A stretch of DNA of 64,000 nucleotides from contig NIVC01000628.1 in assembly GCA_002269645.1 (NCBI GenBank), positions 62,001-126,000 of the forward strand, given 5' to 3'. A program made the translations under genes and the position numbers. The stretch is from Macrostomum lignano. Lineage: Eukaryota. Each line of letters begins with the position of its first letter. Positions within the stretch are counted from its first letter, which is position 1. Below the pieces are notes generated by a model. The model was given only the letters and a program-made list of their open reading frames with translations. It was not told the origin of the DNA and did no database searches. Positions 6,674 to 59,647 of this stretch are shown piece by piece.

Positions 6674-6689
6674 GCCACAGCAGACTCAC

Positions 6690-8562: not shown

Positions 8563-9934
8563 CTGGAATGAACAAATTTTCAAAGTGGCCCTGAGCACCA
8601 TCTGAAACTCAAGACCATCCTCCTCTTCTTTCTCAACGATATCGCATTCTGTCTGAGAGCTGTTCTCAGTGGCTGTCTGAGTGTTGAATGACAGCAACTG
8701 GTCTGAGCCCGATATTAGTTATCTCTCCGACTTTTTTCTCACCCAGAGCAGTCGTTTCCTATCGCATCAAAAAAGCAAGACAAGGTAAATCAAGCGGCTG
8801 TGTGTTTTTTTTCAGTCAGTGGCAAGAACAAAAGAGGGATCAAAGAGGGACTCTGGTCCCCTTTGAGTCGGGCATTTGATACTTTGAGTTGCCATCTCTT
8901 CCATTTGGTTTTTGTCGATTATTCAATTGAGCAACCTGAGCTGATGAAGGAACTCCCCCTTCCACCAAATTGGAGATTTGAGGATAAATTAACAAAAACA
9001 ATTTCGGGCTGGGGTGGAGGGTCAAGTTCTGTTTTGAGTTTGCGGATCAATGGAACAGGCCGTGAAATCTCGGGAGCTCTGAAGCTGCAGCAATATCGCC
9101 CCAATTATTTGATAGAGAAATCAACCGCTAGGAAGCGGAATGCGAAAAGCTGCTTGCTCCCCAGCCTCTTCCCCATCGGTTCAGTTTTTGTTGCTTCAAA
9201 TTTTTGATGCAGACCCCCCTCCCCTCTATCTCCGCTTCCCGGTCGCGTTTAATTGGGAGAAGAAGCTGGAGGAGCCTTATTAGAGCCTCATCAAGACACA
9301 GGAGAGGGTTGGAAGCAACGAGACGAGACTTGGGCAGTTTAGTGAGGAACTGAGCCCGATCCGGGGGGAAACAATGCATTGTACGGCCCAGCTTTGCGAG
9401 AACAAAAACTGAAGGAACTTGGGGGGCTCACAGCTCAAGAATGAGAAAAGGAAGGAGACAACTTCCTTGCAAGCCCCATCACCCCAGCTTCCTTGGTCGC
9501 GGGGGGTGGTGGGAATAATACGGAGATGAGAGTTTGTAGGGGATCACGCGATGTAGAACAGACAGAGAGTCCCGGGGCAGATATGGCTTTTCAGTTCTCA
9601 AGCCCGCTGTTGTCAATCAGTCTCACACAGGGCAGTGGGGAAGCCGCCGCATCCAACAAATAATTTGCAAAGCATCTGTGGTAGTAGAAAGATGGCGACC
9701 CGAAATTCTTCTAACTAATGGCCGCCACACCTTTTATAGCACCGGCTGCTCCTCGGCATCAGTGCTAATGGCCCCCCGTATTCACCTGCTCATTTATTCA
9801 CCCACCATCTATGCTCAGATTATTGTAGTGACGGCCCGAATTCGCTGGAGAATAATTTTGATGCGATCTCACATTGAAGGGCTAGTCAATTCACTGTAGG
9901 CTCTATAGGCTGTGAGGTCTATCGGCTTTAGAGT

Positions 9935-10226
9935 CTAAAGGCTCTGACGGTCACTGAAGGTCTACTTGGAGCTCTAAAGGCTCTGACGGTCACTGAAGGT
10001 CTACTTGGAGCTCTAAAGGCTCTGACGGTCACTGAAGGTCTACTTGGAGCTCTAAAGGCTCTGACAGTCACTGAAGGTCTACTTGGAGCTCTAAAGGCTC
10101 TGACGGTCACTGAAGGTCTACTTGGAGCTCCAAAGGCTCTGACGGTCACTGAAGGTCTACTTGGAGCTCTAAAGGCTCTGACGGTCACTGAAGGTCTACT
10201 TGGAGCTCCAAAGGCTCTAACGGTCA
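9935..10226. repeat. 39-bp minisatellite (AAGGCTCTGACGGTCACTGAAGGTCTACTTGGAGCTCTA)n, about 7.5 copies, intronic
   Basis: Tandem units; begins about 36 bp after the donor at 10262. Confidence 0.95.
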
Positions 10227-10262
10227 TTGAGAAGGTTTTGGTCCCTTCCACGTGGCACTCAC

Positions 10263-10474
10263 CTTGACTTTCCTATGGTAGATCTCACGATGGTCCTCCA
10301 TGATCTCCCGGCTGGTGCTGATAGCCTGGCAGACGCTGCAAACGTACGTGAAGTACTTTGGCGGCTCATCCCGCAGGCTGCACGGAAAATGAGTCTCGAA
10401 CTTGTGCAGGTTCAGCGTGGTGTAGGCGCATTCCGGACAGCGGACGAAGTGCACCCAGGGCTGCGACTGTGGCT

Positions 10475-10514
<40 letters not shown>

Positions 10515-10565
10515 TTGTTGGGGCGACGACGGCGGCGGCTGCTGAGCCTGCGGCTGCTGCTCCAT
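10263..10565 (-). CDS. Zinc-finger/DUF3504-like gene, first coding exon (MEQQPQ...poly-Q, CPECAYTTLNLHKFETHF, CSVCQAISTSREIMEDHREIYHRKVK)
   Basis: ATG in ACAACGATGG context at 10565; donor AAG|GTGAGT phase 0 matches exon 2. A candidate acceptor TTTCAG| at 10755 suggests 10566-10755 is spliced 5' UTR. One atypical and one canonical C2H2-type finger. Confidence 0.82.
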
Positions 10566-12774
10566 CGTTGTTGCTAAGCTTGAGTAGGCGGGAATTGGCA
10601 GGAGCAGGCCGAGAGGTGCTGCGCCGAACTGCAGTGGGAAGTTTGCTGCTGCTGCTGCTGCTCCCGGAGTCGCTTGTAACTGTAGCTGATCCACTCTGCA
10701 GCTCTTGGCCTTGCTCTGCCGGTCGAGTCGGTGGCGCTGGCGCTGGCGGAGTTATCTGAAACGGTTCAAGTGCAGACGCGCTGCAGCAGCCTTGAGCCCG
10801 TCACTGGGGGGGGGGGGGCAGAGGCGGTAGTGAAGGGGACGCGGAGAGTGAAGGAGGCTCTGGGGGAGCAATAACAGAGTCGTGCATTATTCAAATTATC
10901 GGATCGGGTCCGGCGCGCACCGCAACCCCCGGGCGGCTGATGGTTACAAAACAGTCCCCACCAGTTCCTTCTTCCTTCGCCTCACACCTGGCCCATCATC
11001 ATAAAGAAAAGGGAGGCTGAACAGTAAGAACAGTAGGAGCCTTGAACAGGACCGCGAGGCGTGTTGGCTCAGCAAAGTTTTCCTAGCATTAATTCTATAT
11101 CGCGGCGCTGGACTTAGAGAGGGATGGGGAAATAACTCCCGCCTGGAGTGGGCATTGATTTTTCAAGACTCCGCTTTTGACACCTCTGCTGCAACAGACC
11201 CCTGTGCTTGCCGACTTCTCCTAGAGGCCGCACCGCCGCTCAGGTCAATACAGGCAGGCTGCTGGTTACGCAATCAAACAATTGAGCAGCCGGGAGCTTG
11301 CAAAACAATGCGCAAGTTTTTCTCTGCTTCCTGCTGAATGCAAAGTTTCCTTTTTTAAACAGCAGACAAGCTTTTTTTCCGTGTGAGATATGCTCCTTCT
11401 AGGAGGAAGCCAGGAAACCCAGCTGGTCCTGCAGAGACCCAACTAACTACACCCAATTTATTCTCCCAGCGCCTATTCCATTTTCACGGGTAATTCAAAA
11501 TTCATGGACAAATGAATTGGTGGCTCTGCTGTCTCCCCACCTCTCTTCTCTCCTCTGCAGTCTTGTTCAAGTTTTTCCATGCCTTGGCCTCTCCTTTCAT
11601 TATCGTTAAGGATTTTGCGGCTCTGATACGAGAGACTGCTGGGGGCTTGAGAACAGAGGAAGCTGCGGACAAAACACCCCGCTGCTATCCCTCCTCCCGA
11701 CCCCACAGCCCGGCTCAGGCTGGCTCCGCCTTGAAATTCTTTTATTCTATTCTCGGGGCTCTTCCTAAGTCGCTTCCTCCTTCTCTGTGGTGTCTTTGTA
11801 TTCATGTGTGGGTGTGCAGTCCCTCCGCCACCATTCAGGCCGGAGTTGAATGCTGCTGCTGCTGCTGCTGCTGCTGCTATGATGATGTCGATGTTAAAGT
11901 AAGTTGCTTGCCAATGAGGAGTGTAAAAAACTGACTTTAAAACCAATTTCTTTCTTTCCGCCTCTTTCTGGGGCTCCTAGCATTGCTGGGCGGCCCGCTC
12001 CGCTCCTTTCCCCTCCCCACACACCGGGGTCTCCTTGACGCGGGTCTCCTGCGGAAGCGGGGGTCTCACTACTCACCACTCACTCACTCACCGCAGGAGA
12101 GGGCCCAGAGGCAGCGCAGACAACAGACTGGGCCATGCAGAAAATGGCATAAAAAATTAACTAATAATTTTCTATCAATTCACCAACCATCGGGCCAACC
12201 CCAATTACAAATTTTGCTCAGCGCAAAAGCAGAAAATGCCTTCTATAGTTTACTCTCTTTTTTCACCTCAATACAATTCAAGCTTTTTCAGGCGCTGCGC
12301 TGCACAAGGCATGTCTTGACAAAGCCACTGACAGAACGTGATACACAATAAGCGCAGCCCCACGCAGTGACGCCGATTACACTCTGTCGGAGTTGTTGAG
12401 ATGCTCCACTGTGGTTGGGGGCGAATGCTATCAGGAATACAACCCGGATAAATGTTCGTACCCCCCCCCCCAGTAACCATCTGTTTTATCAAGTGGATCG
12501 ATTCTGTTAGTCAAGTTGACGCAAAAGTTGTGGCCAACCCTTAATGGATTGGTTTGACAGTCCTCTTGCGAAAGTTATCTTCTGTGCCCGGCTTTTATCT
12601 TTCAGTGACAAAATTGACTCTTTGCCTCCCAAGCAGATTGAAGCTTGCAGACGTGAATAATATTTTCATATCTGTCTGGCTAAAGCAAGCAATGCGCTTC
12701 TTCCCATTATATTTTGGGCAGCGAATCGCTACCGCAAATTCCTCCTCCGAAGAAGGGATCAGCCCGCAATCGCT

Positions 12775-14572: not shown

Positions 14573-17292
14573 ATTATTAAAACAGCATTTGAAAGTGTAA
14601 AAATGCTGATAAAAAGTATTGATAACATTCCCGAATGCCGGATAGAATCGCGGTAAACAGAGGAACTTACCGCTTGAGTTTGACGCAGAATTTTGCCAAA
14701 CTCTAGACAGCTAATCGAAGTTTAGATTTTTAGCGTTGAAACTGGCCGCCTCGGATTGTAACAAATGAATAACTGAATGAGTAGCACTCGTGGCTTTTGG
14801 AGAGAGAGAGTAGGGCCCCGTTATCGCTGCGGTGTCTAACTTTTAAAAACTTCGGGCCGGAGTGAGGCATGGGGAGAGGAGGGGACGGAGGTGTGGGAGG
14901 GCCCCCAGTCGCTGCGGCTGGCGGAAGTTGGCGAACACTGGGCAGTCTCCATTGGCCAGCAGAGGGTTGGGGGGAGGGGTGCCCGAGGGTAGCCCATGCT
15001 GTTGAGGTACTACTGACACGGATGATACTACTGAGACAGCGCTTTCAGACCAGAATCTGCAACTGAAACTCCCAGATCGACAGCGCAAATAAACACTAAT
15101 AGTTGAGCACAGATTATCTTCCCTATGGGATAGCAGGAGTGGCACCCAGGATACTGCTGCACTGGGGAAGTGATGTTGCCTCTTCTCTCCCCCCCAACCA
15201 GAAGGCCTCACGAACCTTTGGCAGCTTTAGCTCAACACTTCCCCTCTCTGCTGTCCCATCTCCCCTTCTCCGCTATTATGGAGAGGATAAAACACCGGAC
15301 TGCGAGCTCGCTTTGTGTTTTCGTTTTGGAGATCTGGGCGTTGGGTCTGCAGCCCGCACTGGGGTCCCGGCCGGAAGCTGGGGCGCCAAGTCACTTTTCT
15401 CCCCCTCCCAGCATCCAGCCTCGCTCTCTCAGCACCTCAATGGGATAATACAGGGAAGCTGGGCAGGGGATATGCTCCGCCCCTCCCAGCTCAGGCCTTG
15501 GGTCGTTGAAGTTGTGGCCCTCCTCAGCTCCCGGACACCGCTTGTAAAACCAGCTTTTTGTATGCAGCAGCCCAGCTTTTTCAAGGGAAGTAGCCAGCGC
15601 ACGGGGTCTTCCTTCTGCCTTCTCCATCCGTGCAAGTTGTTTCCTTTCTGGTGCCTCCTCTGCTCCTCCCCTCCAAGCAGTTATATCTGGGGCAATAAGC
15701 TTCATCTGCTCAAAAAATTCTCCTCAATAGAATCTTCAGCACCGCACACTCTGGGTGCTCCGAGACCGCAGTCCGGGGCTGGGGGGGTTAGGCGCTACGG
15801 GGGGCGGATGGGTGAAACAATGGGAATCTTCCAGTGGGAGTTGCTGCGCTCCCTCATCTAGTTAGAAGAAGCTTTTTGGCTAATTTCTCAATTTAAGTAA
15901 TAAGAAGTTTCGCTGGACCCACTTGAGGCCCCGTTGAGACCTAACTGGAGACTCAAGCTGCTTCTCTCTTGGGTGTCAAGTTCTGAAAAATTTAAAGAAG
16001 TGCCAGCATCTTCTCGGCTGCACAGCACATGGGGATGTTTTCTAATTCTCTGCTTCTGGAGTCTGTCGGGTGCTCATTATGCCGGACTGTCCCCATATTC
16101 ACCTGGTCACTACAGGGATTATTACCTTGCAAAAATATCAACACTGAAACACACGGAGAGAATTCTCAGTAGTTGCCAAAATAGCAACAGGGCAGTGAGC
16201 ACTGCTCACGGCAAGACGGTGTTTCACCGTGGAGCAGGCAAAGCTACAGAACAGAGAGGCAGAGGCGTCAGTCAGGGGATCCGTGGCAGCAGTCTCGGTA
16301 ATTAGAAGGCATATACGGTTTATCAGCACAAGTCGAGCATGAACAATGCGGCGATAACGGAGCCGGGGGGCCGTATCTCAGGAGCTCTGGAGCCCGCACC
16401 CCCTTCCCCCGGGGGGCTAACGATGTCCGCGTCCAGACTAAAGAAAGCAAAGAGAAGCAAAAGAAGAAGGAGAGGAGCAGCTCAGCAAAAGGTGATCGCC
16501 GCATTCCGCTGGGCAGCCTCCGGTGCGAGCATCTGTAAAAAAATCCCCCCGCCCATGAGCTATTACCCCTTTTCCCATGCCTCTGTTCCCCCAATCCTAA
16601 CAGACTCACCGCACGCACGAGCCCTGAATTTACTGATTACAGGAGTCTTATATTTAGGGGTTGAAAGGCCATTAATTTACAATGGCTGAGCTGTCCGGTC
16701 TCATTCACCCCATCCCAGCCTCCCCAGCCAGTTCCCAGCGCCTCATCAACCAGAAGTTTTTTTGGCAACGCTGGATACGGTGAAGCTGAAATAACAAATT
16801 TGCGCAGAAAAATTAGCGACCAATTCTGCATTGCTTAACAACTGTTAATTTATAAAATTAGTCAGGCCCTTCAGGTGAGTTCCCAGCATGGGGCTGATAA
16901 TATCCTCTCAACTGGGATATCTCAGTCAGTCAGAGAGAGAGGCTGCGATGATGGGGGGCCCAGCCCGAGCAGAACTGATTGAGCTGGAGTGCATTAAACA
17001 ATCCAGGTTGGCCAAGTGTATAGCAGGGCCTAGCAGCGGCTTACTCCAGAGGTGAGAGAGTTATTCAGCATCCCTAGGCCGCCTCATCAAGAGCCTGTGA
17101 GAGCTCGTCGGCGCCCCCGGGGCAAGCAGCTTCCTGTCAGCGGGACTTCGCATCCGCGGCATAAAAAATAATCAAAATAACAAAAGTAGAGGCAGACACA
17201 GAGTTTCACTTGATCTGCGCTAAAATCCCAGCTAATAAACACCCTGACCATGGGATCATCAGCTCTATCAGACTGGAGACAGAGCCTGCTGA

Positions 17293-18075
17293 GAGTGAAT
17301 CACACCGCCAGTAGAGAGTGAATCACAGCATCAGTAGAGAGTGAATCACAGCATCAGTAAAGAGTGAATCACAGCATCAGTAGAGAGTGAATCACAGCAT
17401 CAGTAGAGAGTGAATCACACCGCCAGTAGATAGTGAATCACAGCATCAGTAGAGAGTGAATCACAGCATCAGTAGAGAGTGAATCACAGCATCAGTAGAG
17501 AGTGAATCACAGCATCAGTAGAGAGTGAATCACACCGCCAGTAGATAGTGAATCACAGCATCAGTAGAGAGTGAATCACAGCATTAGTAGAGAGTGAATC
17601 ACACCGCCAGTAGATAGTGAATCACAGCATCAGTAGAGAGTGAATCACAGCATCAGTAGAGAGTGAATCACAGCATCAGTAGAGAGTGAATCACAGCATT
17701 AGTAGAGAGTGAATCACACCGCCAGTAGATAGTGAATCACAGCGCCAGTAGAGAGTGAATCACAGCATTAGTAGAGAGTGAATCACAGCATCAGTAGAGA
17801 GTGAATCACAGCATCAGTAGAGAGTGAATCACACCGCCAGTAGATAGTGAATCACAGCATCAGTAGAGAGTGAATCACAGCATCAGTAGAGAGTGAATCA
17901 CACCGCCAGTAGATAGTGAATCACAGCATCAGTAGAGAGTGAATCACAGCATTAGTAGAGAGTGAATCACACCGCCAGTAGATAGTGAATCACAGCATCA
18001 GTAGAGAGTGAATCACAGCATCAGTAGAGAGTGAATCACAGCGCCAGTGGAGAGTGAATCACAGCGCCAGTGGAG
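17293..18075. repeat. 23-bp minisatellite (AGA[G/T]AGTGAATCACA[GCAT/CCGC]CAGT)n, about 34 copies
   Basis: Tandem units read directly. Confidence 0.95.
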
Positions 18076-21649: not shown

Positions 21650-22457
21650 GTCAGTATCCAGGCCGAGCGCATGTATTGGCTACCTGGTGTTAAAGTGTCG
21701 ATGGTTTCCTACAGTTAATTTCCAGGCTTACCTGTACAGAGACAGGCGCATTGCAAGGCAAGATCCAGCAAGTTTTTATTTGCATCGCTTCCCCTTCCAA
21801 GATTTGCGTCGTAAAAGTTATAAAAAATGACTTCCTGTTTTGATAACGAGGCTCGGGGCTCACCTTAGACTTCAGCCTAGCTTTCGGGCTGGATGGCTGC
21901 AAGGTGAGGAGGGCCGTCGCTGAGCTCGCGTGTCTGCACAGCCGCATTGAGAAAACTCAGGATTTCAACTTTAATCGGCATCCAGTCTGTGGATGCAGGA
22001 CGCCTCATCCTTTTCTTCATCTGTACGGGCCAGAAAAGACCAGAAACTTCATTCACACGAAAGCAGAACTTAGAACGTAGAGACAAGATGATCGGATTGC
22101 TCAATTCAAAAATTCCAACTTGACAGCTTTGAAATTTGAAGCGACATTTCATCGCGGATTTCTTGGCTAAGTTTCAAGTCACGAGCACTTTGATAAACTC
22201 AAATAGTGGGTGCCGGAAAAGTACAAGCAGTCAAACACCTGGGACATTTTGGGATAATTTTTATTAAACACAGAGGTTTTCCTTTGGTTAACAGAATTTG
22301 AAGGACTTCGCTCGGCATCCTGCTCAACCAAGGACAAAATGGAGTGGCGACTGCGATGGAGTGCGAATCTGGATACACAGCAAATGAATTTAGTGTTGAG
22401 TAATAGTTCCTCAAAAGCCACAGAGCATCCTGGTGAACTGCTCATTGTCGATCGATC

Positions 22458-23246
22458 TTATTCATAGTTGATCGGGTCGAAGTATCCGCCCCTCGATTGA
22501 TAGTAGGCCCTCTTCTTGCCGTAGTTGATGGGATCAAAGTAGGCCCTCTTCTTGCCGTAGTTGATGGGATCAAAGTAGGCCCTCTTCTTGCCGTAGTTGA
22601 TGGGATCAAAGTAGGCCCTCTTCTTGTCGTAGTTGATGGGGTCAAAGTAGGCCCTCTTCTTGCCGTAGTTGATGGGATCAAAGTAGGCCCTCTTCTTGCC
22701 GTAGTTGATGGGGTCAAAGTAGGCCCTCTTCTTGCCGTAGTTGATGGGGTCAAAGTAGGCCCTCTTCTTGCCGTAGTTGATGGGATCAAAGTAGGCCCTC
22801 TTCTTGCCGTAGTTGATGGGATCAAAGTAGGCCCTCTTCTTGCCGTAGTTGATGGGGTCAAAGTAGGCCCTCTTCTTGCCGTAGTTGATGGGGTCAAAGT
22901 AGGCCCTCTTCTTGCCGTAGTTGATGGGATCAAAGTAGGCCCTCTTCTTGCCGTAGTTGATGGGGTCAAAGTAGGCCCTCTTCTTGCCGTAGTTGATGGG
23001 ATCAAAGTAGGCCCTCTTCTTGCCGTAGTTGATGGGATCAAAGTAGGCCCTCTTCTTGCCGTAGTTGATGGGATCAAAGTAGGCCCTCTTCTTGCCGTAG
23101 TTGATGGGGTCAAAGTAGGCCCTCTTCTTGCCGTAGTTGATGGGATCAAAGTAGGCCCTCTTCTTGCCGTAGTTGATGGGATCAAAGTAGGCCCTCTTCT
23201 CTGCATTAACTTCATCTCCATCAGATGACGCATCCTTGATGTCTGT
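22458..23246 (-). CDS. Neuropeptide prohormone, peptide-coding exon: TDIKDASSDGDEVNAEKR-(AYFDPINYGKKR)x18 + one AYFDPINYDKKR + AYYQSRGGYFDPINYE*
   Basis: Acceptor TTGATTTCTCAG|ACA phase 0. Acidic spacer, then 19 in-frame 12-aa units each with Gly (amide donor) plus a KKR convertase site. The recurrent variable position is synonymous GAT/GAC. Confidence 0.9.
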   Translation of the reverse strand, partial: TDIKDASSDGDEVNAEKRAYFDPINYGKKRAYFDPINYGKKRAYFDPINYGKKRAYFDPINYGKKRAYFDPINYGKKRAYFDPINYGKKRAYFDPINYGKKRAYFDPINYGKKRAYFDPINYGKKRAYFDPINYGKKRAYFDPINYGKKRAYFDPINYGKKRAYFDPINYGKKRAYFDPINYGKKRAYFDPINYGKKRAYFDPINYDKKRAYFDPINYGKKRAYFDPINYGKKRAYFDPINYGKKRAYYQSRGGYFDPINYE

Positions 23247-23667
23247 CTGAGAAATCAAGAGGTTAATTTCTCGTCACCCATGGTTTATGATGTCCAAATT
23301 AGGCAAGGAACAGTCGTTAGATTTAATCTGTAGCCCCCTTGTTAGGTCCCCATAAATAATGAAGATTCTCGAAATTTTCCAAATCGTGCTCAACTACCTG
23401 TTCTGAGCCCCGGCTTCAAAGCCAAAGTCATCAGGCCAGCTGACTAGCTGAAGGCGTGGACAAGAATAATTCTGAAGTATCTTAATCGCGCTGGGAGCCG
23501 TTCTTCCTAACCGGGCGTGCAGTTGACTGACTCAGACGGGGTCGCAGGCTTGATGAAAACTGTGCAGCATTGGGAGTTGGACTGTCCGGCTTAGTGGATC
23601 TGGATTGCGGGTTGGATAGCACTGCAGCTCTATTCGAATCTTGTTAGGAAGGAGAAACCTACGTCCC

Positions 23668-24270
23668 AGCTCTCTCAGCTCTCTCAGCTGTCTCAGCTCT
23701 CTCAGCTCTCTCAGCTGTCTCAGCTCTCTCAGCTGTCTCAGCTCTCTCAGCTCTCTCAGCTGTCTCAGCTCTCTCAGCTGTCTCAGCTGTCTCAGCTCTC
23801 TCAGCTGTCTCAGCTCTCTCAGCTGTCTCAGCTCTCTCAGCTGTCTCAGCTGTCTCAGCTGTCTCAGCTCTCTCAGCTCTCTCAGCTCTCTCAGCTCTCT
23901 CTCAGCTCTCTCAGCTATCTCAGCTCTCTCAGCTCTCTCAGCTGTCTCAGCTCTCTCAGCTGTCTCAGCTGTCTCAGCTCTCTCAGCTGTCTCAGCTCTC
24001 TCAGCTGTCTCAGCTCTCTCAGCTGTCTCAGCTCTCTCAGCTGTCTCAACTCTCTCAGCTGTCTCAGCTGTCTCAGCTGTTTCAGCTCTCTCTCAGCTCT
24101 CTTTGTCTTGCCACTTGTCTCTCTCCTCTCCCTCCCTGCCTCTCCTCTCTCCCTCTTTGTCTCTCCTCTCCCTCCCTGCCTCTCCTCTCTCCCTCCCTGC
24201 TTCTCCTCTCTCCCTCTTTGTCTCTCCTCTCCCTCACTGTCTCTCCTCTCCCTCACTGCCTCTCCTCCCT
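23668..24270. repeat. (CTCTCAG/CTGTCTCAG-type)n array followed by a CT-rich tract, intronic
   Basis: Read directly; lies between the two prohormone exons. Confidence 0.9.
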
Positions 24271-24794
24271 CCCTGTGTTTCCACTTTCCCTCTCGTAAAA
24301 AGCCATTCCCGGGAGCAGAGCATTCCGAACGTCACTGCGGTAATGAGAGGCTTTAAGCCTTTTGTTTTCAATTTTGCATTCGACTGCAAAGAGTGAGTAG
24401 GTTTTAGTATCGAATTTCTCTGAACAATACTCGTACAAACTAATAATATGCTTGAAATCGCCCTAGTTTTTCATCAGGCCTAATAGATACCTTTTACGGT
24501 GATGAGGGAGCCAAAAACTTTCTGTTTAGGTGGGGGGGGGATCCAGAAGGGCACTGCTGTGTTGTGTTTGACATGTCTCAAAGATTTTTAGAAGGCCTTA
24601 GAAGTAAATTAAAAGTTCTAATCCCTAACATAAGAATCCTTAGTATCATATGTAAGAAGGGGCAACTTAGAAAATTCCAACATCAAAAGTTTTAAAACTT
24701 GCTCGTCAAGTACTTCGTTTTTTATTTTTAATACGGGCTATGATCAGTTAGGATAACTTGGGTAGAGTTGAGGAAAGAACATGGGTTGGGACAA

Positions 24795-25160
24795 GGACTC
24801 AGGATAGTAGGTGGGATGAGGACTAAGGAGAGTAGGTGGGATGAGGACTCAGGATAGTAGGTGGGATGAGGACTAAGGAGAGTAGGTGGGATGAGGACTC
24901 AGGAGAGTAGGTGGGATGAGGACTAAAGAGAGTAGGTGGGATGAGGACTCAGGAGAGTAGGTGGGATAAGAATTCAGGAGAGTAGGTGGGATGAGGACTA
25001 AGGAGAGTAGGTGGGATAAGAATTCAGGAGAGTAGGTGGGATGAGGACTAAGGAGAGTAGGTGGGATGAGGACTCAGGAGAGTAGGTGGGATGAGGACTA
25101 AGGAGAGTAGGTGGGATGAGGACTCAGGAGAGTAGGTGGGATGAGGACTCAGGAGAGTAG
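24795..25160. repeat. 25-bp minisatellite (GAGTAGGTGGGATGAGGACT[A/C]AGGA)n, intronic
   Basis: Tandem units ending about 53 bp from the donor at 25213. Confidence 0.93.
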
Positions 25161-25213
25161 GTTGGGTACAGAGGGTCAGTGATGGTGAGGCTCATTGACA
25201 ATAGAATTCTCAC

Positions 25214-25300
25214 CCTGGACTCCGCAGCAAAAGCGGTGCAGCCCAGCAACAGCAGGAGCAGTAGAACCAGTGGAGATGTTGAGAAGTTTCGCGAGGCCAT
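25214..25300 (-). CDS. Neuropeptide prohormone, signal-peptide exon MASRNFSTSPLVLLLLLLLGCTAFAAESR
   Basis: ATG in ACTATGG context, poly-Leu h-region, AFA/A small-residue cleavage site; donor AGG|GTGAGA phase 0 matches the acceptor at 23246. Intervening exons are not excluded. Confidence 0.82.
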
Positions 25301-25507
25301 AGTCGGATGCTGAGACAGATGTCGTTTAAAAAAACTCCTAAAACTCAGTCTCCGAGCTGAGAATTCGGCCAGTGAGTCAGTTTGCTGTTTTATGCAGCTC
25401 AGATCAGTCTGACATTCGGCCAGTTGCCGATTGGCTGGCCGATGCGATTGGCTGCACCGCCGAAAATGGCTGGGTTGAGAGTTGGGGGTGTAGGCTCGGC
25501 CTCTCAT

Positions 25508-29820: not shown

Positions 29821-29844
29821 AACTCCTACAGCTAACAACCAGCA

Positions 29845-30678
29845 ATGGGTTCCTCGGCTGGCAAGGAAGAGCAGCCGCCGCCGCCGCAGTGGCGGGAGGC
29901 CGGGCGCACCGTGCCGGATCCGCGCGATCCGCCCGACGAAGAAGGCGCCGGTCGGAACTTTGACTTCGGCGATAGGGTCCGGCGCCAGCAGCCGGAACGA
30001 GCGGCGCCAACTGGCGAGCGCGGCATCGGACGCCCGTCCGATCCGTCCTCGGGAGCCGGAGGCGGCGGCGGCGGCAACCGCGAGTTCATCCGGGTCGGCG
30101 ACAGGCTGGAGAACAAGCCGATGGACAAGTTGCAGCACGGCCTGGGCGACCCAAAGCGGGAGAAATTCAAAGCGCCAGTTGACAAGAAGAAGCTGCGAGG
30201 CACCGTGGCGACTGAGAAGCAGCCAGGAGCCACGGCTGGCCGGCAGGTGCTGAACTGGGAGGAGGTGGACAACACCAGCTCCTACGTTGTGATATCGAAG
30301 CCACAGATGCTGGTGGAAGACGCCGAGCCCTACAATAAGAGGCCGTTGCCAACTTTTCGCAGAGGCGCTGACGTGGCCGAACTCGATGAAGAAGAGCTCG
30401 AGGCCAGACGGGAGGCGGAGCTGCTGCCGCTGGAGCAGCAGGTCGACCCGGGCGTCAACATTGACGGCTTGGAGATCGACACTGTCGGCTACCAGGCCAG
30501 GCTGGACCCCCTGCCGCTGCTGCTGCCGCGCAAGGCAAATGTGCCGAGGGAGGACTACCTGGGCACCGCCTGCGGCCAGGATGTCCTGGGCGTGGAGGAC
30601 GACGGCTACGCCAGAGACGTTGGCCGGCTGCCAAATGGGGAGAGAATAAACTTGCTGCGCATCATTAGCCAGTATTGA
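29845..30678 (+). CDS. Uncharacterised 277-aa single-exon protein (family not recognised)
   Basis: Long non-repetitive ORF with strong G/C third positions like the other exons here; ATG preceded by acceptor-like CTACAG/AACCAG; clean stop; bounded by arrays on both sides. Confidence 0.78.
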   Translation: MGSSAGKEEQPPPPQWREAGRTVPDPRDPPDEEGAGRNFDFGDRVRRQQPERAAPTGERGIGRPSDPSSGAGGGGGGNREFIRVGDRLENKPMDKLQHGLGDPKREKFKAPVDKKKLRGTVATEKQPGATAGRQVLNWEEVDNTSSYVVISKPQMLVEDAEPYNKRPLPTFRRGADVAELDEEELEARREAELLPLEQQVDPGVNIDGLEIDTVGYQARLDPLPLLLPRKANVPREDYLGTACGQDVLGVEDDGYARDVGRLPNGERINLLRIISQY

Positions 30679-30721: not shown

Positions 30722-32052
30722 TGTTCGCTGTGTCAGTGAGGATGTTTGCTGTGTCAGTGAGGCTGTTCGCTGTGTCAGTGAGGATGTTCGCTGTGTCAGT
30801 GAGCATGTTTTCTGTGTCAGTGAGGATGTTCGCTGTGTCAGTGAGGATGTTTGCTGTGTCAGTGAGGATGTTCGCTGTGTCATTGAGGATGTTCGCTGTG
30901 TCAGTGAGGATGTTTGCTGTGTCAGTGAGGATGTTTGCTGTGTCAGTGAGGATGTTCGCTGTGTCAGTGAGGATGTTTGCTGTGTCAGTGAGGATGTTCG
31001 CTGTGTCAGTGAGGATGTTCGCTGTGTCAGTGAGGATGTTTGCTGTGTCAGTGAGGATGTTCGCTGTGTCAGTGAGGATGTTCGCTGTGTCAGTGAGGAT
31101 GTTTGCTGTGTCAGTGAGGATGTTTGCTGTGTCAGTGAGGATGTTTGCTGTGTCAGTGAGGATTTTTGCTGTGTCAGTGAGGATATTCCCTGAGGCCAGT
31201 GAGGATGTTCGCTGTGTCAGTGAGGATGTTCGCTGTGTCAGTGAGGATGTTTGCTGTGTCAGTGAGGATGTTTGCTGTGTCAGTGAGGATGTTTGCTGTG
31301 TCAGTGAGGATGTTCGCTGTGTCAGTGAGGATGTTCGCTGTGTCAGTGAGGATGTTCGCTGTGTCAGTGAGGATGTTTGCTGTGTCAGTGAGGATGTTTG
31401 CTGTGTCAGTGAGCATGTTTGCTGTGTCAGTGAGGATGTTTGCTGTGTCAGTGAGGATGTTTGCTGTGTCAGTGAGGATGTTTGCTGTGTCAGTGAGGAT
31501 GTTTGCTGTGTCAGTGAGGATGTTTGCTGTGTCAGTGAGGATGTTTGCTGTGTCAGTGAGGATGTTTGCTGTGTCAGTGAGGATGTTCGCTGTGTCAGTG
31601 AGGATGTTTGCTGTGTCAGTGAGGATGTTCGCTGTGTCAGTGAGGATGTTTGCTGTGTCAGTGAGGATGTTTGCTGTGTCAGTGAGCATGTTTGCTGTGT
31701 CAGTGAGGATGTTTGCTGTGTCAGTGAGGATGTTTGCTGTGTCAGTGAGGATGTTTGCTGTGTCAGTGAGGATGTTTGCTGTGTCAGTGAGGATGTTTGC
31801 TGTGTCAGTGAGGATGTTTGCTGTGTCAGTGAGGATGTTTGCTGTGTCAGTGAGGATGTTCGCTGTGTCAGTGAGGATGTTTGCTGTGTCAGTGAGGATG
31901 TTCGCTGTGCCATGAGGATATTCCCTGAGGTCAGTGAGGGAGGATATTTCATGAGGTCAGTGAGGATATTCCCTGAGGTCAGTGAGGGAGGATATTCCCT
32001 GAGGCCAGTGAGGATTTTCCCTGAGGTCAGTGAGGACGTTCGCTGTGTCAGT
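30722..32052. repeat. 21-bp minisatellite (GTCAGTGAGGATGTT[T/C]GCTGT)n, about 60 copies, with ATATTCCCTGAG variants
   Basis: Read directly; source of the VSEDVCC/MFAVSVR ORFs. Confidence 0.96.
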
Positions 32053-35000
32053 GACGCAATGCAATGCGGTATCGTGTATTGACTCAAGTAGTACGCGTAC
32101 TTTATAGCATACTGTAAAATACTTCTCCAGTATTGGTATCAATATTTTTCGCTAAATATATACCCAACAATGCGACTGCTTTACAAGAAGCCGCGAAGCA
32201 GAAATTCTCTGAATAAATTTCGTTTCAATGCCATGCACATAGGCTTTACATCGTAAATGGTGAGCTCTCATTCTGAAGAGAATGAACTTACAAGCTTTAC
32301 TGGAGCTGGGACCGGATTCCCGCAGTGACCTGGGGTCGGGGGTCTGCAGTCAGAGGCCTGCAGTAACAACACAGAATTGCTTTCATTTCGTGCTCAAGAG
32401 GACTCCTCAATGGCAGCCATGATTCCGTGCCCTAGGTAGGCAACCTCGCCCCTCCCAGGTCCGGATGGCTGGATCAGAAGTTACCTTTCGCGTGCGGTGG
32501 TCCTCATGGTATTTGGTTTCTGGGGAGAGCATGACAGACTCGGGAAGGATCAAAGCTGGTCTGTCTGTACTCGACTCACTGCGCAGCACCTTGCAGTATC
32601 TTAACTAATTCGCAATTCAGAAATTGTTCCCCACCAAGCTTTCCTTTCTGCCTTCTTCTGGATGATCTGCCTGTCACGCGGCACAGAGCGAGGAATATAA
32701 TGCGAAGATGAATCCTTTCTTATGAAGGCTTTTATAACAATTTTTCATTGCTTACATAATTCAATTAATTCATCGAGTATATTGATTATTCCTAACAAAA
32801 TCGATAAAAGGGGATTGACTTAGCTGGAAACTCTTTCAACACGATACTACTTGCATGATTTACCAATGAATCACTTGGATTACCAATGAATTGCAAGAAG
32901 GAATGCAACTCAGTTAATGCAGACGTTCTGGCCCCGAAGTACGAATTAACGTTCCGAATATTAAAGAGGCACTGAAAGACCACTAGTGGCAACAGCATCG
33001 GAGCAATAAAGAATTAAGCCAATTAGGCTCCAAATTTTGTGCACCTAAGCGGAATCGATCCTCGGATCCTGTCGCGTGAGCCAGACGCGTCACTTCTGAG
33101 ATGCTCTCTGCCTCCCTTCCACAGGATTGGGCTGCTGTCGGTCGCTTTCACAACGTCGAAATCCACTACGGAGATAGGCAATTATGATCGGCATGTATGA
33201 ATTTTCCAATCTCCGCATGGCTTTTTGAGTCATGCCAGCCACAACTGAGGTGCTCTGAATTCTCCGCCTTCAACGTCTACCAGGTGCACGTCTGACAAAC
33301 GGCCAATCGTTTTTTCTGCTACTTGGTTGGCGTAATTACGTCGTAAATCCTAGGAGTACCTTGCGAGAAGTTTACGAACTCACGTCTGGGACATTTAACA
33401 GCTGCTGTCCTTTCCTGGCACGCAATCAACCGTCTGCTCAGACATGCAGTGTCGGCACTACTGGAATTTAAGCATCCCATTGGTGACTGCCGTGCGCCTT
33501 TTTACTCAATTGACAGGTCCACAAACACGGATGTCTCAGGAGTTTCCTATAGGCCTTTTTTAGATGGCTTTAGCGTTTAGGTAGCCCACCCAAGGACGAC
33601 TTAAGTAACGTATATATCTACTTAAGTAGTCCTTGAGCCCAGCCTTAGATACCGTAGCTTAGTGGTCGCCAGAGGGGTTAACGGAATGAAGCCAAATAAA
33701 GTAAGTCCAAGGCCGATCAAAAATAAAAATGTTGATTATTTACAACGGATTGCGGTGTAAACAGAGTATTCATTGCATCAAATGTTTTTGGCGAGTTTTT
33801 CTTCTACAGGACCATAATAAATAAAAATTATTAAGGCGATCATAGCAGGAACGGAGTGCCCCAGCTAATGACTGAAGTTTTACCAATTTGGGCGAGGCAA
33901 AACCACGCATTTTATGCCCGGAACATTAGGCTCGTTTATAGGACTCTGCTGTCTTCCATCCACAGGAAGACTGTCTAATTGCATAGAGGATGACGATAGC
34001 TCATACGTGTCGAATTCGATCGGGACTGCAATTAATTCTGGGGCCGATTAAGCGTCATCAATAAGACTAAAATTAAGGAGGCTGCAGGTTTCACCATGCT
34101 TTCGTGATCAATTTCTGCCTTGAGCTGTGCGATGTTATATAACTTATGCTTGCTTTAGAGCGATTGGAGTGAGCAGTGACAGCAAGAGTGACTGCAGGCT
34201 GGGTGCTTGGGGAAACAAGAGTTAGAGAGAGTTTCTGCGATCTGTCTGAGACTAGCCATGGCCTACTTGATGTATCCGTAAGATTTAACAGGAGTGACAG
34301 TGACCAGTGACGTCGAAGTTGAAGTGGAGTTGAAAATGTTTAAAGTGAGAGTTTTAAATGAGAACAATGGCTTTGAAACCGTTCACGGAGTATAAAACAA
34401 TTTGTAGCGGTATATAGTTATCAAATACTCGTAATATTACGTGGCTAAAACTATATAATAGCTGGAAAGTTGTTATTGGTCTGGTAATTATGAATGTTAT
34501 TCACAATTTATTTATCAAGTGAAGCAATCAATCGCGCGAAAAAGTCGAAGAATATAGAATAAATCTTAAAAAATAATAAGCAGGGAGCAGGGCATTACGA
34601 GTACGACTGTACTGCGATCGAGGCTGGCTATCGTAGAGTTTCTTAGACCTTGAGAAGCTGCATTTATTAATTATCATATTTTCAAAGGCATGCTTGAATG
34701 CTTATTTTGCTACCGTCTCGCTAATTAGAGACGATTGACCTCATAATACTGAATATATAATTCGATTCGTGGAGTCTAGCACTCGAACTCCTTGAAATTA
34801 ACTTGTGGAAAGAAAATGGTTTGACTAAGAAAGTTTCCCAGATCCTTAATCCAATTAAACTTAAGAATTCCTTCCTCTCGCCCTCTTTCCAGTGTGCATT
34901 TTCACAAGTCAATTTGCATGTGGATCTGATTATTATTCAGTAAATATTTCAATCAATCTTCGATGCAAATTCAATTTTTCATCAACCACCAGGCAACAAT

Positions 35001-38868: not shown

Positions 38869-41120
38869 GGGGTGTGTTTCATAACCTCGATATTTCACAA
38901 GCTACAAACTCCACAAGCTCCAATCTCCACAAGCTCCAATCTCCACAAGCTCCAATCTCCACAAGTTCCAATCTCCACAAGCTCCAATCTCCACAAGCTC
39001 CAATCTCCACAAGCCTCAAACTCCACAAGCTCCAATCTCCACAAGCTCCAATCTCCACAAGCTCCAATCTCCACAAGCCTCAAACTCCACAAGCTCCAAT
39101 CTCCACAAGCTCCAATCTTCACAAGCTCCAATCTCCACAAGCTCCAATCTCCACAAGCTCCAATCTCCACAAGCTCCAATCTCCACTCCAATCTCCACAA
39201 GCTCCAATCTTCACAAGCTCCAATCTCCACAAGCTCCGATCTCCACAAGCTCTAATCTCCACAAGCCTCAAACTCCACAAGCTCCAATCTCCACAAGCTC
39301 CAATCTCCACAAGCTCCAATCTCCACAAGCTCCAAACTCCACAAGCTCCAAACTCCACAAGCTCCAATCTCCACAAGCTCCAAACTCTACAAGCTCCAAA
39401 CTCCACAAGCTCCAAACTCCACAAGCTCCAAACTCCACAAGCTCCACAAGCCTCAAACTCCACAAGCTCCAATCTCCACAAGCTCCAAACTCTACAAGCT
39501 CCAAACTCCACAAGCTCCAAACTCCACAAGCTCCAAACTCCACAAGCTCCAAACTCCACAAGCTCCAAACTCTACAAGCTCCAATCTCCACAAGCCTCAA
39601 ACTCCACAAGCTCCAAACTCCACAAGCTCCAAACTCCACAAGCTCCAAACTCCACAAGCTCCAAACTCCACAAGCTCCAAACTCTACAAGCTCCAAACTC
39701 CACAAGCTCCAAACTCCACAAACTCCAATCTCCACAAGCTCCAAACTCCACAAGCTCCAAACTCCACAAGCTCCAATCTCCACAAGCCTCAAACTCCACA
39801 AGCTCCAAACTCCACAAGCTCCAAACTCCACAAGCTCCAAACTCCACAAGCTCCAAACTCCACAAGCTCCAATCTCCACAAGCTCCAAACTCCACAAGCT
39901 CCAAACTCCACAAACTCCAATCTCCACAAGCTCCAAACTCCACAAGCTCCAAACTCCACAAGCTCCAATCTCCACAAGCCTCAAACTCCACAAGCTCCAA
40001 ACTCCACAAGCTCCAAACTCCACAAGCTCCAAACTCCACAAGCTCCAAACTCCACAAGCTCCAAACTCCACAAACTCCAATCTCCACAAGCCTTAAACTC
40101 CACAAGCTCCAAACTCCACAAGCTCCAATCTCCACAAGCCTCAAACTCTACAAGCTCCAAACTCCACAAGCTCCAAACTCCACAAGCTCCAATCTCCACA
40201 AGCTCCAATCTCCACAAGCTCCAATCTCCACAAGCCTCAAACTCCACAAGCTCCAAACTCCACAAGCTCCAAACTCCACAAGCTCCAAACTCCACAAGCT
40301 CCAATCTCCACAAGCTCCAAACTCCACAAGCTCCAAACTCCACAAACTCCAATCTCCACAAGCTCCAAACTCCACAAGCTCCAAACTCCACAAGCTCCAA
40401 TCTCCACAAGCCTCAAACTCCACAAGCTCCAAACTCCACAAGCTCCAAACTCCACAAGCTCCAATCTCCACAAGCTCCAATCTCCACAAGCTCCAATCTC
40501 CACAAGCTCCAATCTCCACAAGCTCCAATCTCCACAAGCCTCAAACTCCACAAGCTCCAATCTCCACAAGCTCCAAACTCCACAAGCTCCAAACTCCACA
40601 AGCTCCAAACTCTACAAGCTCCAAACTCCACAAGCTCCAAACTCCACAAGCTCCAAACTCTACAAGCTCCAAACTCCACAAGCTCCAAACTCCACAAACT
40701 CCAATCTCCACAAGCCTTAAACTCCACAAGCTCCAAACTCCACAAGCTCCAATCTCCACAAGCCTCAAACTCCACAAGCTCCAAACTCCACAAGCTCCAA
40801 ACTCCACAAGCTCCAAACTCCACAAGCTCCAATCTCCACAAGCTCCAATCTCCACAAGCTCCAATCTCCACAAGCCTCAAACTCCACAAGCTCCAATCTC
40901 CACAAGCTCCAATCTTCACAAGCTCCAATCTCCACAAGCTCCAATCTCCACAAGCTCCGATCTTCACAAGCTCTAATCTCCACAAGCCTCAAACTCCACA
41001 AGCTCCAATCTCCACAAGCTCCAATCTCCACAAGCTCCAAACTCTTGAACTAATTCAAACTTGTGAAATTTCGAGCTTTACGAGCTATAACGTTTCGAGC
41101 TTATGAAACTCGAACTTGGC
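38869..41120. mobile_element. Probable MITE relic of the 56807-57192 family whose interior has expanded into a 16-bp array
   Basis: Left end GGGGTGTGTTTCATAACCTCGATATTTCACAAG; inverted copy CTTGTGAAATTTCGAG at 41060-41075; both match the TCGAAATTTCACAA subrepeat of the 56.8-kb element. Confidence 0.5.
38902..41042. repeat. 16-bp minisatellite (CTCCACAAGCTCCAA[A/T])n, about 130 copies
   Basis: Read directly; unit length is not a multiple of 3. Confidence 0.96.
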
Positions 41121-59472: not shown

Positions 59473-59647
59473 GTGAGCTGCCTTACCTGTCAATTGATTT
59501 GCATCAGTCCGTTTAAATATTGTTCCTACCGTGAGTGTAAGAATCCCATTTTAATCGCCTTAAAATTCGGCCGAAATTATTGCCTTAAAGTCCTTAAAAT
59601 TTGGCTCAATCACCCCGATAATTGCCATCTACAATTGCCTCGGTAAT

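What the first reader, a model, noticed from the sequence alone, without database searches (positions are those of the whole stretch)
22458..25300. Neuropeptide prohormone camouflaged as a 36-bp minisatellite (AYFDPINY-amide x18)
Seen: a signal-peptide exon splices in frame to an acidic spacer and 19 units bounded by KR/KKR; 18 end in Gly, one has Gly>Asp, and a final divergent GYFDPINYE follows. The recurring difference between units is synonymous (GAT/GAC). Established: Gly plus basic residues gives convertase cleavage and PAM amidation. From memory, FDPIMF/FDPIQF/QFDPIMY-amide peptides occur in planarian prohormones, so this may belong to that family (to be verified). Inference: an unusually high-copy precursor that repeat-masking would hide, with copy number probably polymorphic.
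Basis: partly seen in the sequence, partly recalled or inferred. Interest (0 to 1): 0.76.

Follow-up and report, generated by a model that had tools for sequence, protein, structure and literature searches.

The report
Flatworm FDPI-type neuropeptide precursor gene
The 36-base tandem repeat is the coding part of a two-exon Macrostomum lignano gene for a secreted prohormone that should release 18 copies of AYFDPINY-amide; it is a new, unusually high-copy member of a flatworm neuropeptide family already proven by mass spectrometry in planarians and schistosomes.

Summary
Exon 1 (25300-25214) encodes a signal peptide. A GT..AG intron of 1967 nt follows. Exon 2 (23246-22458) encodes an acidic spacer, 19 units of 36 bp (AYFDPINYGKKR) and a diverged last copy, GGYFDPINYE. 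Eighteen units carry Gly and one has Gly>Asp.

The window comes from Macrostomum lignano. An open frame is not evidence here, because 3 of the unit's 6 frames are open and about 30% of the window is minisatellite. The coding evidence is as follows:
- A profile built only from planarian, schistosome and cestode FDPI peptides hits this ORF alone among 1089 window ORFs.
- This ORF has 18 G[KR][KR] sites, against at most 3 in any other.
- The old edge copy differs from the consensus by 4 synonymous and 0 non-synonymous changes.
- A second M. lignano copy, buried in a chimeric UniProt model, has the same splice junction and 15 in-frame units.

The family is Smed-spp-15/spp-16 and Schistosoma npp-26. 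Their peptides are confirmed by mass spectrometry and the genes are expressed in neurons.

I found no transcript or peptide data for M. lignano. My verdict is a real gene and a new member of a known kind, of moderate interest.

The parts
25214..25300 (-). Exon 1 coding part: signal peptide MASRNFSTSPLVLLLLLLLGCTAFAAESR. It has an n-region with Arg4, a Leu-rich h-region and an A-F-A motif, which predicts cleavage after Ala25.
   Evidence: It ranks first in hydrophobicity among 39 phase-0 ATG..GT candidates within 10 kb upstream, and it has the best donor. The same exon is present in the M. lignano models P0002 and P0011.
23247..25213 (-). Intron of 1967 nt (GTGAGA...TTTCTCAG). About 49% of it is three unrelated minisatellites: 25 bp x15 at 24787-25162, 19-21 bp x8 at 24119-24275, and 9 bp x48 at 23667-24102.
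23193..23246 (-). Start of exon 2: acidic spacer TDIKDASSDGDEVNAE followed by the first KR cleavage site. There is no in-frame ATG in exon 2, so this frame needs an upstream exon to start translation.
22509..23192 (-). Coding minisatellite of 19 units of 36 bp, each AYFDPINY-G-KKR. It should yield 18 copies of AYFDPINY-amide.
22617..22652 (-). Unit 16, with GGC>GAC (Gly>Asp, codon 22626-22628). It should yield non-amidated AYFDPINYD.
22458..22508 (-). Decayed edge unit and diverged terminal copy, AYYQSRGGYFDPINYE, followed by the TAA stop. The terminal copy keeps YFDPINY through 4 synonymous changes.
22260..22265 (-). AATAAA polyadenylation signal about 195 nt downstream of the stop codon.
   Evidence: This is a sequence consensus only.
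25387..25394 (-). TATA-like CATAAAAC about 90 nt upstream of the ATG. This is a weak, inferred feature.
   Evidence: It was not tested.

Best explanation
This is a two-exon Macrostomum lignano gene for a neuropeptide prohormone of the flatworm FDPI family (Smed-spp-15/spp-16, Schistosoma npp-26).

Proposed mechanism:
1. The 29-residue exon 1 supplies a signal peptide that sends the protein into the secretory pathway.
2. In dense-core vesicles a prohormone convertase cuts after each KR or KKR site.
3. A carboxypeptidase removes the basic residues.
4. Peptidylglycine alpha-amidating enzymes convert the exposed Gly to a C-terminal amide.

Predicted products per precursor:
- 18 copies of AYFDPINY-NH2 ([M+H]+ 1001.47)
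- one AYFDPINYD
- an acidic N-terminal spacer peptide
- a C-terminal AYYQSRGGYFDPINYE, or GGYFDPINYE if the single Arg is also cut.

The near-identical 36-bp units arose recently by slippage or unequal crossing-over. That is the same process that fills this genome with minisatellites. Selection has kept the frame and the peptide.

What is shown: the sequence architecture, family membership by motif and profile, signs of purifying selection, and a second in-frame copy with the same junction. What is inferred: transcription, the splice, processing, amidation, neuronal expression and action through a receptor.
For: 1. Architecture and coordinates were verified.
2. Family proof from other species:
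- Smed-spp-15 is signal + spacer + FDPIQFGKR x8 + FDPIMFGR. Its peptides were detected by MS and it is expressed in the cephalic ganglia, ventral nerve cords and pharynx.
- Smed-spp-16 gives QFDPIMY and FDPIMY-amide (PMC2953531).
- Sm-npp-26 peptides were seen by LC-MS/MS (PMC9495596), and the gene marks the 'neuron 3' cluster in miracidia (PMC11349301).
3. An HMM built only from non-Macrostomum peptides hits this ORF alone among 1089 window ORFs: E=1e-21 from 20 domains of about 8 bits each, with the next ORF at E=1.3.
4. BLASTP against the Mesocestoides ortholog gives E=5e-11 and aligns the spacer, KR and three peptides. Other orthologs were found in Echinococcus, Hydatigera, Opisthorchis and Paragonimus.
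5. This ORF has 18 G[KR][KR] sites, against at most 3 in any other ORF of the window.
6. The terminal diverged copy shows 4 synonymous and 0 non-synonymous differences across YFDPINY, with P about 6e-4 under neutrality. The GAT/GAC site is synonymous only in this frame.
7. Exon 1 is the best signal-like phase-0 exon within 10 kb upstream.
8. UniProt A0A1I8IE52 (P0011) ends with a second copy that has the identical AAESR|TDIK junction, 15 in-frame units and the same tail.
9. M. lignano paralogs share the layout: AYFDPMGYG (P0001) and QVYFDPIDN x at least 11 (P0159).
10. M. lignano has a prohormone convertase 2 homolog expressed in the nervous system (PMC4490696).
11. An AATAAA signal lies about 195 nt past the stop.
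Against: - No transcript, EST, peptide or in situ data for M. lignano could be reached.
- The correct 291-aa protein is absent from a collection of 5.8 billion clusters.
- The splice junction rests on consensus, frame logic and a computational gene model.
- Each unit scores only about 8 bits against the family profile, and the 20 copies are not independent evidence.
- At database scale, only M. lignano paralogs and unplaced environmental sequences were significant with the single-sequence query.
- The cestode ortholog's intron sits inside the signal peptide, after residue 13, so the intron position is not conserved.
- The signal peptide was judged by rule of thumb, not by SignalP.
- The older public model P0002 shows frame-shifted units. 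I read these as assembly indels but cannot prove it.
- No function is known for any member of the family.
Confidence: 0.85

Rival explanations
1. It is an ordinary non-coding minisatellite that happens to be open in this frame. The signal-like ORF upstream would then be a coincidence.
For: About 30% of the window (about 19 kb) is tandem arrays, and many have periods divisible by 3 and ORFs up to 719 aa. The 36-bp unit is open in 3 of 6 frames. No transcript evidence was found.
Against: - It is the only ORF of 1089 that matches a profile of FDPI peptides from other flatworms.
- It is the only ORF with periodic G-K-K-R sites.
- Its edge copy keeps the peptide through 4 synonymous changes.
- A phase-matched signal exon with good GT/AG sites lies upstream.
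- A second copy keeps the frame with a different unit number.
- Paralogs and orthologs share the architecture.
Confidence: 0.03
2. The array is translated in the +1 frame from the ATG at 23233 (ORF 22442-23233, minus strand), or through an alternative acceptor. That would give (GPTLIPSTTARR)n rather than the FDPI peptide.
For: This frame is open for 263 aa, starts with ATG and also has RR sites. The public model P0002 uses an acceptor inside exon 2.
Against: - No homolog has that peptide.
- Both variable sites are non-synonymous in that frame (I/T and A/T).
- The terminal copy is not conserved in that frame.
- That ATG is not followed by a signal peptide.
- The frame-0 peptide matches an MS-proven family.
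Confidence: 0.02
3. It is a silent or decaying duplicate of a genuine prohormone gene. M. lignano carries extensive duplication, and the expressed copy may be another locus, such as the 15-unit one.
For: At least two copies of the whole region exist in public M. lignano data (P0002/window versus P0011). This copy carries one Gly>Asp unit. No expression data were available.
Against: The ORF, the splice sites, the signal peptide, 18 of 19 processing/amidation sites and the poly(A) signal are all intact. The other copy also has one defective unit (GNKR), so one defect per array looks like normal noise.
Confidence: 0.07
4. It is a real secreted multi-copy peptide gene, but it acts outside the nervous system, for example as a gland secretion, rather than as a neuropeptide.
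For: [quoted passage not shown] Smed-spp-15 is also seen in unidentified sub-epidermal cells and the pharynx.
Against: The main expression of both characterised orthologs is neuronal. Amidated short peptides released at dibasic sites are the hallmark of regulated neuroendocrine secretion (established knowledge).
Confidence: 0.05

Closest known systems
Smed-spp-15 (Schmidtea mediterranea secreted peptide prohormone-15, GenBank BK007013; Collins et al. 2010, PMC2953531)
   Same: Both have a signal peptide, a short spacer, KR, tandem identical FDPIx[FY]-Gly-basic units and a slightly different last copy. Both give amidated products, which were MS-confirmed in the planarian. The planarian gene is expressed in the CNS.
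   Different: - The planarian peptide is a hexapeptide (FDPIQF-amide) with 8+1 copies and 9-residue units.
- Here the peptide is an octapeptide with an Ala-Tyr extension, ends in Asn-Tyr-amide, and has 18(+2) copies, 12-residue units and KKR sites.
- The units here are 98% identical at the DNA level.
Smed-spp-16 (BK007042)
   Same: The core is FDPIMY, one residue away from FDPINY. A copy sits at the very C-terminus of the precursor. FDPIMY-amide was reported at lower confidence.
   Different: It has four copies separated by unrelated spacers, and it is mostly non-amidated with an N-terminal pyroGlu.
Schistosoma npp-26 (Smp_071050) and neodermatan orthologs (Opisthorchis TGZ67796.1, Paragonimus KAF5404909.1, Mesocestoides, Hydatigera, Echinococcus)
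   Same: The octapeptides x-Y/H-FDPI-x-[FY] (SYFDPIIY, AYFDPILF, AYFDPIMF) have the same length and N-terminal extension as AYFDPINY. They have a signal peptide and an acidic spacer. npp-26 is a neuron marker in miracidia.
   Different: They have no Gly before the basic site, and the peptides were detected as free acids. They have 2-6 copies. The cestode gene has its intron inside the signal peptide.
M. lignano paralogs: A0A1I8ITX1 (AYFDPMGY-Gly, auto-named 'Allatostatin') and A0A1I8HWB0/A0A1I8I4A1 (QVYFDPIDN x at least 11)
   Same: They come from the same species, have the same architecture and also form tandem arrays.
   Different: The peptides differ, and the third paralog is non-amidated. 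All of them are buried in truncated or chimeric public models with misleading automatic names.
High-copy amidated neuropeptide precursors in general (for example Lingula anatina XP_013401647.1 with 19 x ..DPFN[LM]-Gly-KR, and Tigriopus 'FMRFamide-like neuropeptide 18' with 14 copies)
   Same: They follow the same logic of many tandem Gly-dibasic units after a signal peptide, so they show what this gene works like.
   Different: The peptide sequences are unrelated or not demonstrably related. The hits arise from the shared repeat grammar.

Membership tests
Flatworm FDPI-type prohormones (spp-15/spp-16/npp-26) | Repeated core peptide xFDPIx[F/Y] | tested here: met
   There are 20 copies of YFDPINY. 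A profile built only from planarian, schistosome and cestode peptides hits this ORF with E=1e-21 and 20 domains. It is the only hit among 1089 window ORFs.
Flatworm FDPI-type prohormones (spp-15/spp-16/npp-26) | Each peptide is flanked by basic cleavage sites | tested here: met
   KR precedes the first unit and KKR follows each of the 19 units.
Flatworm FDPI-type prohormones (spp-15/spp-16/npp-26) | N-terminal signal peptide followed by a short spacer | tested here: met
   Exon 1 has a Leu-rich h-region (mean Kyte-Doolittle 3.84 over 9 residues) and an A-x-A motif. The spacer has 7 acidic and 2 basic residues. This is a heuristic only, because SignalP was not available.
Flatworm FDPI-type prohormones (spp-15/spp-16/npp-26) | Statistically supported sequence similarity to members in other species | tested here: inconclusive
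   Pairwise BLASTP against Mesocestoides P0005 gives E=5e-11. At database scale, the single-sequence search was significant only for M. lignano paralogs and unplaced sequences. The exhaustive search did recover Opisthorchis (1.1e-9) and Paragonimus (2.1e-6), among many unrelated repeat proteins.
Flatworm FDPI-type prohormones (spp-15/spp-16/npp-26) | C-terminal Gly as amidation signal (spp-15 subtype only) | tested here: met
   18 of the 19 array units have Gly. Unit 16 and the terminal copy do not.
Flatworm FDPI-type prohormones (spp-15/spp-16/npp-26) | Mature peptides detectable by mass spectrometry | not testable with these tools
   No M. lignano peptidome was available. The expected masses were computed.
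Flatworm FDPI-type prohormones (spp-15/spp-16/npp-26) | Expression in neurons | not testable with these tools
   This is known only for the orthologs.
Flatworm FDPI-type prohormones (spp-15/spp-16/npp-26) | Spliced mRNA joining the signal exon to the peptide exon | not testable with these tools
   No transcript data could be reached. The public gene model A0A1I8IE52 has the same junction, but it is computational.
Allatostatin-A (the name UniRef gives to paralog A0A1I8ITX1) | C-terminal Y/FxFGL-amide and a match to the Pfam allatostatin model | tested here: not met
   The peptides end in INY-amide or MGY-amide. A Pfam scan at E<=10 gave no allatostatin hit for the window protein or for P0001.
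Orcokinin / pedal peptide | Peptides of 13-20 residues starting xFD(E/S)I, usually non-amidated | not tested
   Only the N-terminal FDxI resemblance is recalled from memory, and the length does not fit. No paper in the library links them.
Pfam OmdA (PF13376) | A significant domain match | tested here: not met
   The whole-protein score is 40 bits, but no individual stretch is significant. The score is a sum over repeats and therefore an artefact.

The most novel reading that the evidence does not exclude
In M. lignano the FDPI-peptide genes have become true coding minisatellites. The mutational process that fills about 30% of this window with tandem arrays also expands and contracts the peptide-coding units (19 versus 15 between two genome copies, and at least 11 in a paralog). 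If so, neuropeptide dose per transcript is a fast-evolving, copy-number-variable trait held in frame by selection.

The presence of both amidated and non-amidated FDPI paralogs in this early-branching flatworm would then date the spp-15/spp-16 split to before the divergence of macrostomids and planarians.
Probability: 0.3. Interest if true: 0.5.

Novelty: new member of a known kind. Interest (0 to 1): 0.35.

Why it matters
M. lignano is a laboratory model for regeneration, stem cells and sexual selection, but its neuropeptide genes are poorly annotated.

This locus is public only as a garbled 'uncharacterized' model and as the tail of a 2405-aa chimera named after an unrelated domain. Its paralogs carry misleading automatic names ('Allatostatin', 'AMIN domain', 'GPCR domain'). 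About 80% of the coding sequence would be masked as a tandem repeat.

A correct model has three uses:
- It gives a concrete peptide to synthesise, an antibody and probe target, and an RNAi target in a tractable free-living relative of parasites in which npp-26 is a neuron marker of unknown function.
- It extends the family to the deepest-branching flatworm lineage examined here.
- It gives a clean example of a coding minisatellite with apparent copy-number variation.

It does not change how prohormones are thought to work.

Tried and rejected
- Literature search for the exact peptide: 'FDPINY' occurs in no paper of the library. No paper links Macrostomum to spp-15 or npp-26. McVeigh 2009 and Koziol 2016 are not held, so I cannot exclude that a Macrostomum ortholog was listed there.
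A profile of 4-unit rows was used instead. The schistosome rows were synthetic concatenations with assumed KR flanks.
- The Pfam hit to OmdA (40 bits) was rejected as a repeat-summing artefact.
- Most of the 240 exhaustive-search hits are unrelated repeat proteins and were ignored.
- The run and assembly accessions of the unplaced LPFDSMNY/LPFETLNY-amide precursors could not be traced to an organism.
- Intron-position conservation was tested in Hydatigera and is not conserved.
- Rfam and tRNA scans of the window found nothing.
- There is no second FDPI-type gene in the window.
Full report
**1. The observation**

I read the region on the minus strand and rebuilt the proposed coding sequence.

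- Exon 1 runs from the ATG at 25300 to 25214 and encodes MASRNFSTSPLVLLLLLLLGCTAFAAESR.
- The next bases are GTGAGA.
- At 23248-23247 there is an AG preceded by a pyrimidine-rich tract (ctcttgatttctcag).
- The reading frame continues in phase 0 from 23246 to a TAA at 22460-22458.
- The spliced product is 291 residues. It consists of a signal-like N-terminus, an acidic spacer (7 acidic and 2 basic residues), KR, 19 units of exactly 36 bp (23192-22509) that encode AYFDPINYGKKR, and the tail AYYQSRGGYFDPINYE.
- Eighteen units carry Gly. Unit 16 has GGC>GAC (Asp) at 22628-22626.
- The only other variable site is GAT/GAC (12 versus 7), and it is synonymous.
- Tandem Repeats Finder gives 22502-23200 with period 36, 19.4 copies, 98% matches and no indels.

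**2. Is it more than chance?**

An open frame alone means nothing here.

- The 36-bp unit has no stop codon in three of its six frames.
- The window holds about 25 further mini- and microsatellite arrays, about 19 kb of 64 kb at TRF score 200 or more.
- Many of those arrays give ORFs of 150-700 residues.

I therefore looked for properties the other arrays lack.

1. Among all 1089 stop-to-stop ORFs of at least 30 residues, this one has 18 G[KR][KR] sites. The next best has 3.
2. A profile HMM built only from peptides of other flatworms (planarian spp-15/16, Schistosoma npp-26, cestode orthologs; no Macrostomum sequence) hits this ORF with E=1e-21 and 20 domains, and nothing else (next E=1.3). 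Each domain is only about 8 bits and the copies are not independent. What counts is that this is the single best match in the whole six-frame translation.
3. The terminal copy lies outside the homogenised part of the array and is therefore older. It differs from the consensus YFDPINY codons at four positions, and all four are synonymous (TTT>TTC, GAT>GAC, CCC>CCG, TAC>TAT). Only 16% of possible single-base changes in these codons are synonymous, so P is about 6e-4. In the two other open frames this copy is not conserved, and the GAT/GAC site changes the residue.
4. It is by far the most hydrophobic and has the best donor (AGG|GTGAGA).
5. Exon 2 has no in-frame ATG, so this frame needs such an upstream exon.
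6. An AATAAA lies about 195 nt past the stop.

**3. Origin of the window**

A protein search with the spliced product returned UniProt A0A1I8FFM9 of Macrostomum lignano (P0002). P0002 contains the identical signal exon and maps colinearly to the window at 30.5, 28.3, 25.4, 25.3 and 23.2 kb on the minus strand. The window is therefore M. lignano.

That public model is a chimera. It joins antisense ORFs of a neighbouring gene to the signal exon and then to a few frame-shifted repeat units.

The exhaustive search found a better witness, A0A1I8IE52 (P0011). It is 2405 residues long and is auto-named 'MMS1_N domain-containing protein'. Its last 243 residues are a second copy of this precursor.

- It has 15 units instead of 19 and the same tail.
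- It differs by Val13>Leu, by one Asp>Glu in the spacer and by one GNKR unit. It has no Gly>Asp unit.
- Its upstream exons are 99% identical to window 30627-29838, so it comes from an allele or a very recent duplicate of the whole region.

Two points follow. An independent annotation pipeline chose the same splice. The unit number differs between copies while the frame is kept. An assembly collapse in the older assembly cannot be excluded.

**4. What family it belongs to**

- Collins et al. 2010 (PMC2953531) cloned Smed-spp-15. It has a signal peptide, a 22-residue spacer, FDPIQFGKR x8 and a final FDPIMFGR. FDPIQF-amide, FDPIQFG and FDPIMF-amide were detected by mass spectrometry. Expression is in the cephalic ganglia, ventral nerve cords, pharynx and sub-epidermal cells.
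- The same paper cloned Smed-spp-16, which gives QFDPIMY peptides. FDPIMY-amide was detected at lower confidence.
- Their Table 3 equates spp-15 with Schistosoma npp-26 (SYFDPIIY, SYFDPILF, EHFDPIIY, NFDPILF).
- The npp-26 peptides were later seen by LC-MS/MS in cercariae as free acids (PMC9495596).
- NPP-26 (Smp_071050) is the specific marker of the 'neuron 3' cluster in the miracidium atlas, with weak signal in the apical gland cell (PMC11349301).

My searches added orthologs in several other flatworms:

| Species | Peptides |
|---|---|
| Mesocestoides | AYFDPILF, YFDPIIY |
| Hydatigera and Echinococcus | YFDPIRF, YFDPILF |
| Opisthorchis felineus | xHFDPIMF x4 + AYFDPIMF |
| Paragonimus | SHFDPIMF x4 |

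All are annotated as hypothetical or uncharacterised. BLASTP of a shortened window protein against the Mesocestoides protein aligns the acidic spacer, KR and three peptides (E=5e-11 for the pair).

AYFDPINY has the same length and N-terminal extension as the neodermatan octapeptides, and it has the Gly amidation signal of planarian spp-15.

M. lignano has at least two paralogs with the same layout:
- AYFDPMGY-Gly (A0A1I8ITX1, auto-named 'Allatostatin'). My Pfam scan found no allatostatin match for it.
- QVYFDPIDN x at least 11, non-amidated (A0A1I8HWB0 / A0A1I8I4A1).

There is no second FDPI gene in this window.

**5. How it most likely works**

The steps below follow from established knowledge of the regulated secretory pathway. 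None of them was shown here.

1. The signal peptide is removed, probably after Ala25 in ..TAFA|AE.
2. A prohormone convertase cleaves after KR/KKR. M. lignano has a PC2 homolog expressed in the nervous system, and its knock-down is lethal (PMC4490696).
3. A carboxypeptidase E-type enzyme trims the Lys and Arg residues.
4. Amidating enzymes convert the C-terminal Gly to an amide.

The expected products are 18 x AYFDPINY-NH2 ([M+H]+ 1001.4727), one AYFDPINYD (1117.4837), the spacer peptide (2108.9214) and a C-terminal free-acid peptide (1942.8606, or 1174.5051 if the single Arg is used). By analogy with spp-15 and npp-26, I expect expression in a subset of central and pharyngeal neurons and action through a G-protein-coupled receptor. 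No function or receptor is known for any member of the family.

**6. Origin of the array**

The units are 98% identical at the DNA level. The edge unit (AYYQSR..) is decayed and the last copy has drifted at synonymous sites. This is the usual picture of an array homogenised by slippage or unequal exchange in its interior.

The C/T pattern along the array (TTCTTTCTCCTTCCTCTTT) contains a repeated T-C-C-T block at units 8-11 and 12-15, which suggests multi-unit duplications.

The intron is itself 49% minisatellite, and about 80% of the coding sequence lies inside the TRF array.

**7. Limits**

- I could reach no transcript, EST, peptide or expression data for M. lignano.
- SignalP and NeuroPred were not available.
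- The intron position is not shared with the cestode ortholog, whose first intron lies inside the signal peptide.
- Two key flatworm neuropeptide papers (McVeigh 2009, Koziol 2016) are not held. A Macrostomum ortholog may already have been listed there.

**8. Verdict**

It is a new, previously mis-annotated member of a known flatworm neuropeptide family. It has the highest copy number seen in that family, but that number is matched by unrelated precursors elsewhere (Lingula 19, Tigriopus 14).

It is useful for M. lignano neurobiology and for annotation practice. It would not surprise a specialist.

- Confidence that it is a functional FDPI-type prohormone gene: 0.85.
- Interest: 0.35.

Noticed in passing
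window 1-64000 (for example 3747-5320, 17291-18065, 30722-32054, 38896-41044, 45763-48729, 53080-53755): About 19 kb of the 64 kb (about 30%) is mini- or microsatellite arrays with periods of 4-130 bp. There are about 25 separate arrays, and many give long spurious ORFs on both strands.
   Followed up: partly
window 59110-62748 (+): Exons of an AMP-binding enzyme gene (acyl-CoA synthetase or fatty-acid transport type; Pfam PF00501, E=8e-17 and 6e-14). Its introns are filled with minisatellites at 59645-60228, 60693-61183 and 61458-61984.
   Followed up: partly
window 50923-51312 (+), repeat at 51057-51224: An ORF starts with a transmembrane-like segment (MLAIIAAVGFLFVYKRRNR) and continues with a 21-bp coding repeat (PDHNNQP x8). 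It may be a second coding minisatellite, in the cytoplasmic tail of a membrane protein. It has no Pfam match.
   Followed up: no
window 7705-8697 (-) and 10224-10694 (-): ORFs with weak C2H2 zinc-finger matches and long poly-Ala, poly-Pro and poly-Gln tracts. They are probably exons of one transcription-factor-like gene.
   Followed up: no
window 29838-30627 and public proteins P0002 / P0011: The public M. lignano models A0A1I8FFM9 and A0A1I8IE52 translate the antisense strand of the ORF at 29845-30678 (+) and fuse it to the neuropeptide gene. In P0011 the fusion also includes minisatellite ORFs and other long stretches that have no close match in this window. Both are chimeric models with misleading names.
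   Followed up: partly
proteins P0003, P0004, P0030, P0127 (loci L001-L003): These form a family of precursors with LPFDSMNY-Gly-KR or LPFETLNY-Gly-KR repeats and a Cys-containing N-terminal domain. They come from unnamed environmental, RNA-seq and assembly records (ERR63496xx, GCA_041447055.1). They end in ..NY-amide like the M. lignano peptide, but the source organism could not be identified.
   Followed up: partly
protein P0013 (Lingula anatina XP_013401647.1): This uncharacterised brachiopod protein has 19 copies of ..SMDPFN[LM]-Gly-KR. It looks like an unannotated high-copy amidated neuropeptide precursor. It was recovered only through the shared repeat grammar.
   Followed up: no
window 6528-6908 (-): This ORF has a sub-threshold QRICH1-domain match (27 bits against a cut-off of 30.8) and runs into a minisatellite. 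Its significance is unknown.
   Followed up: no
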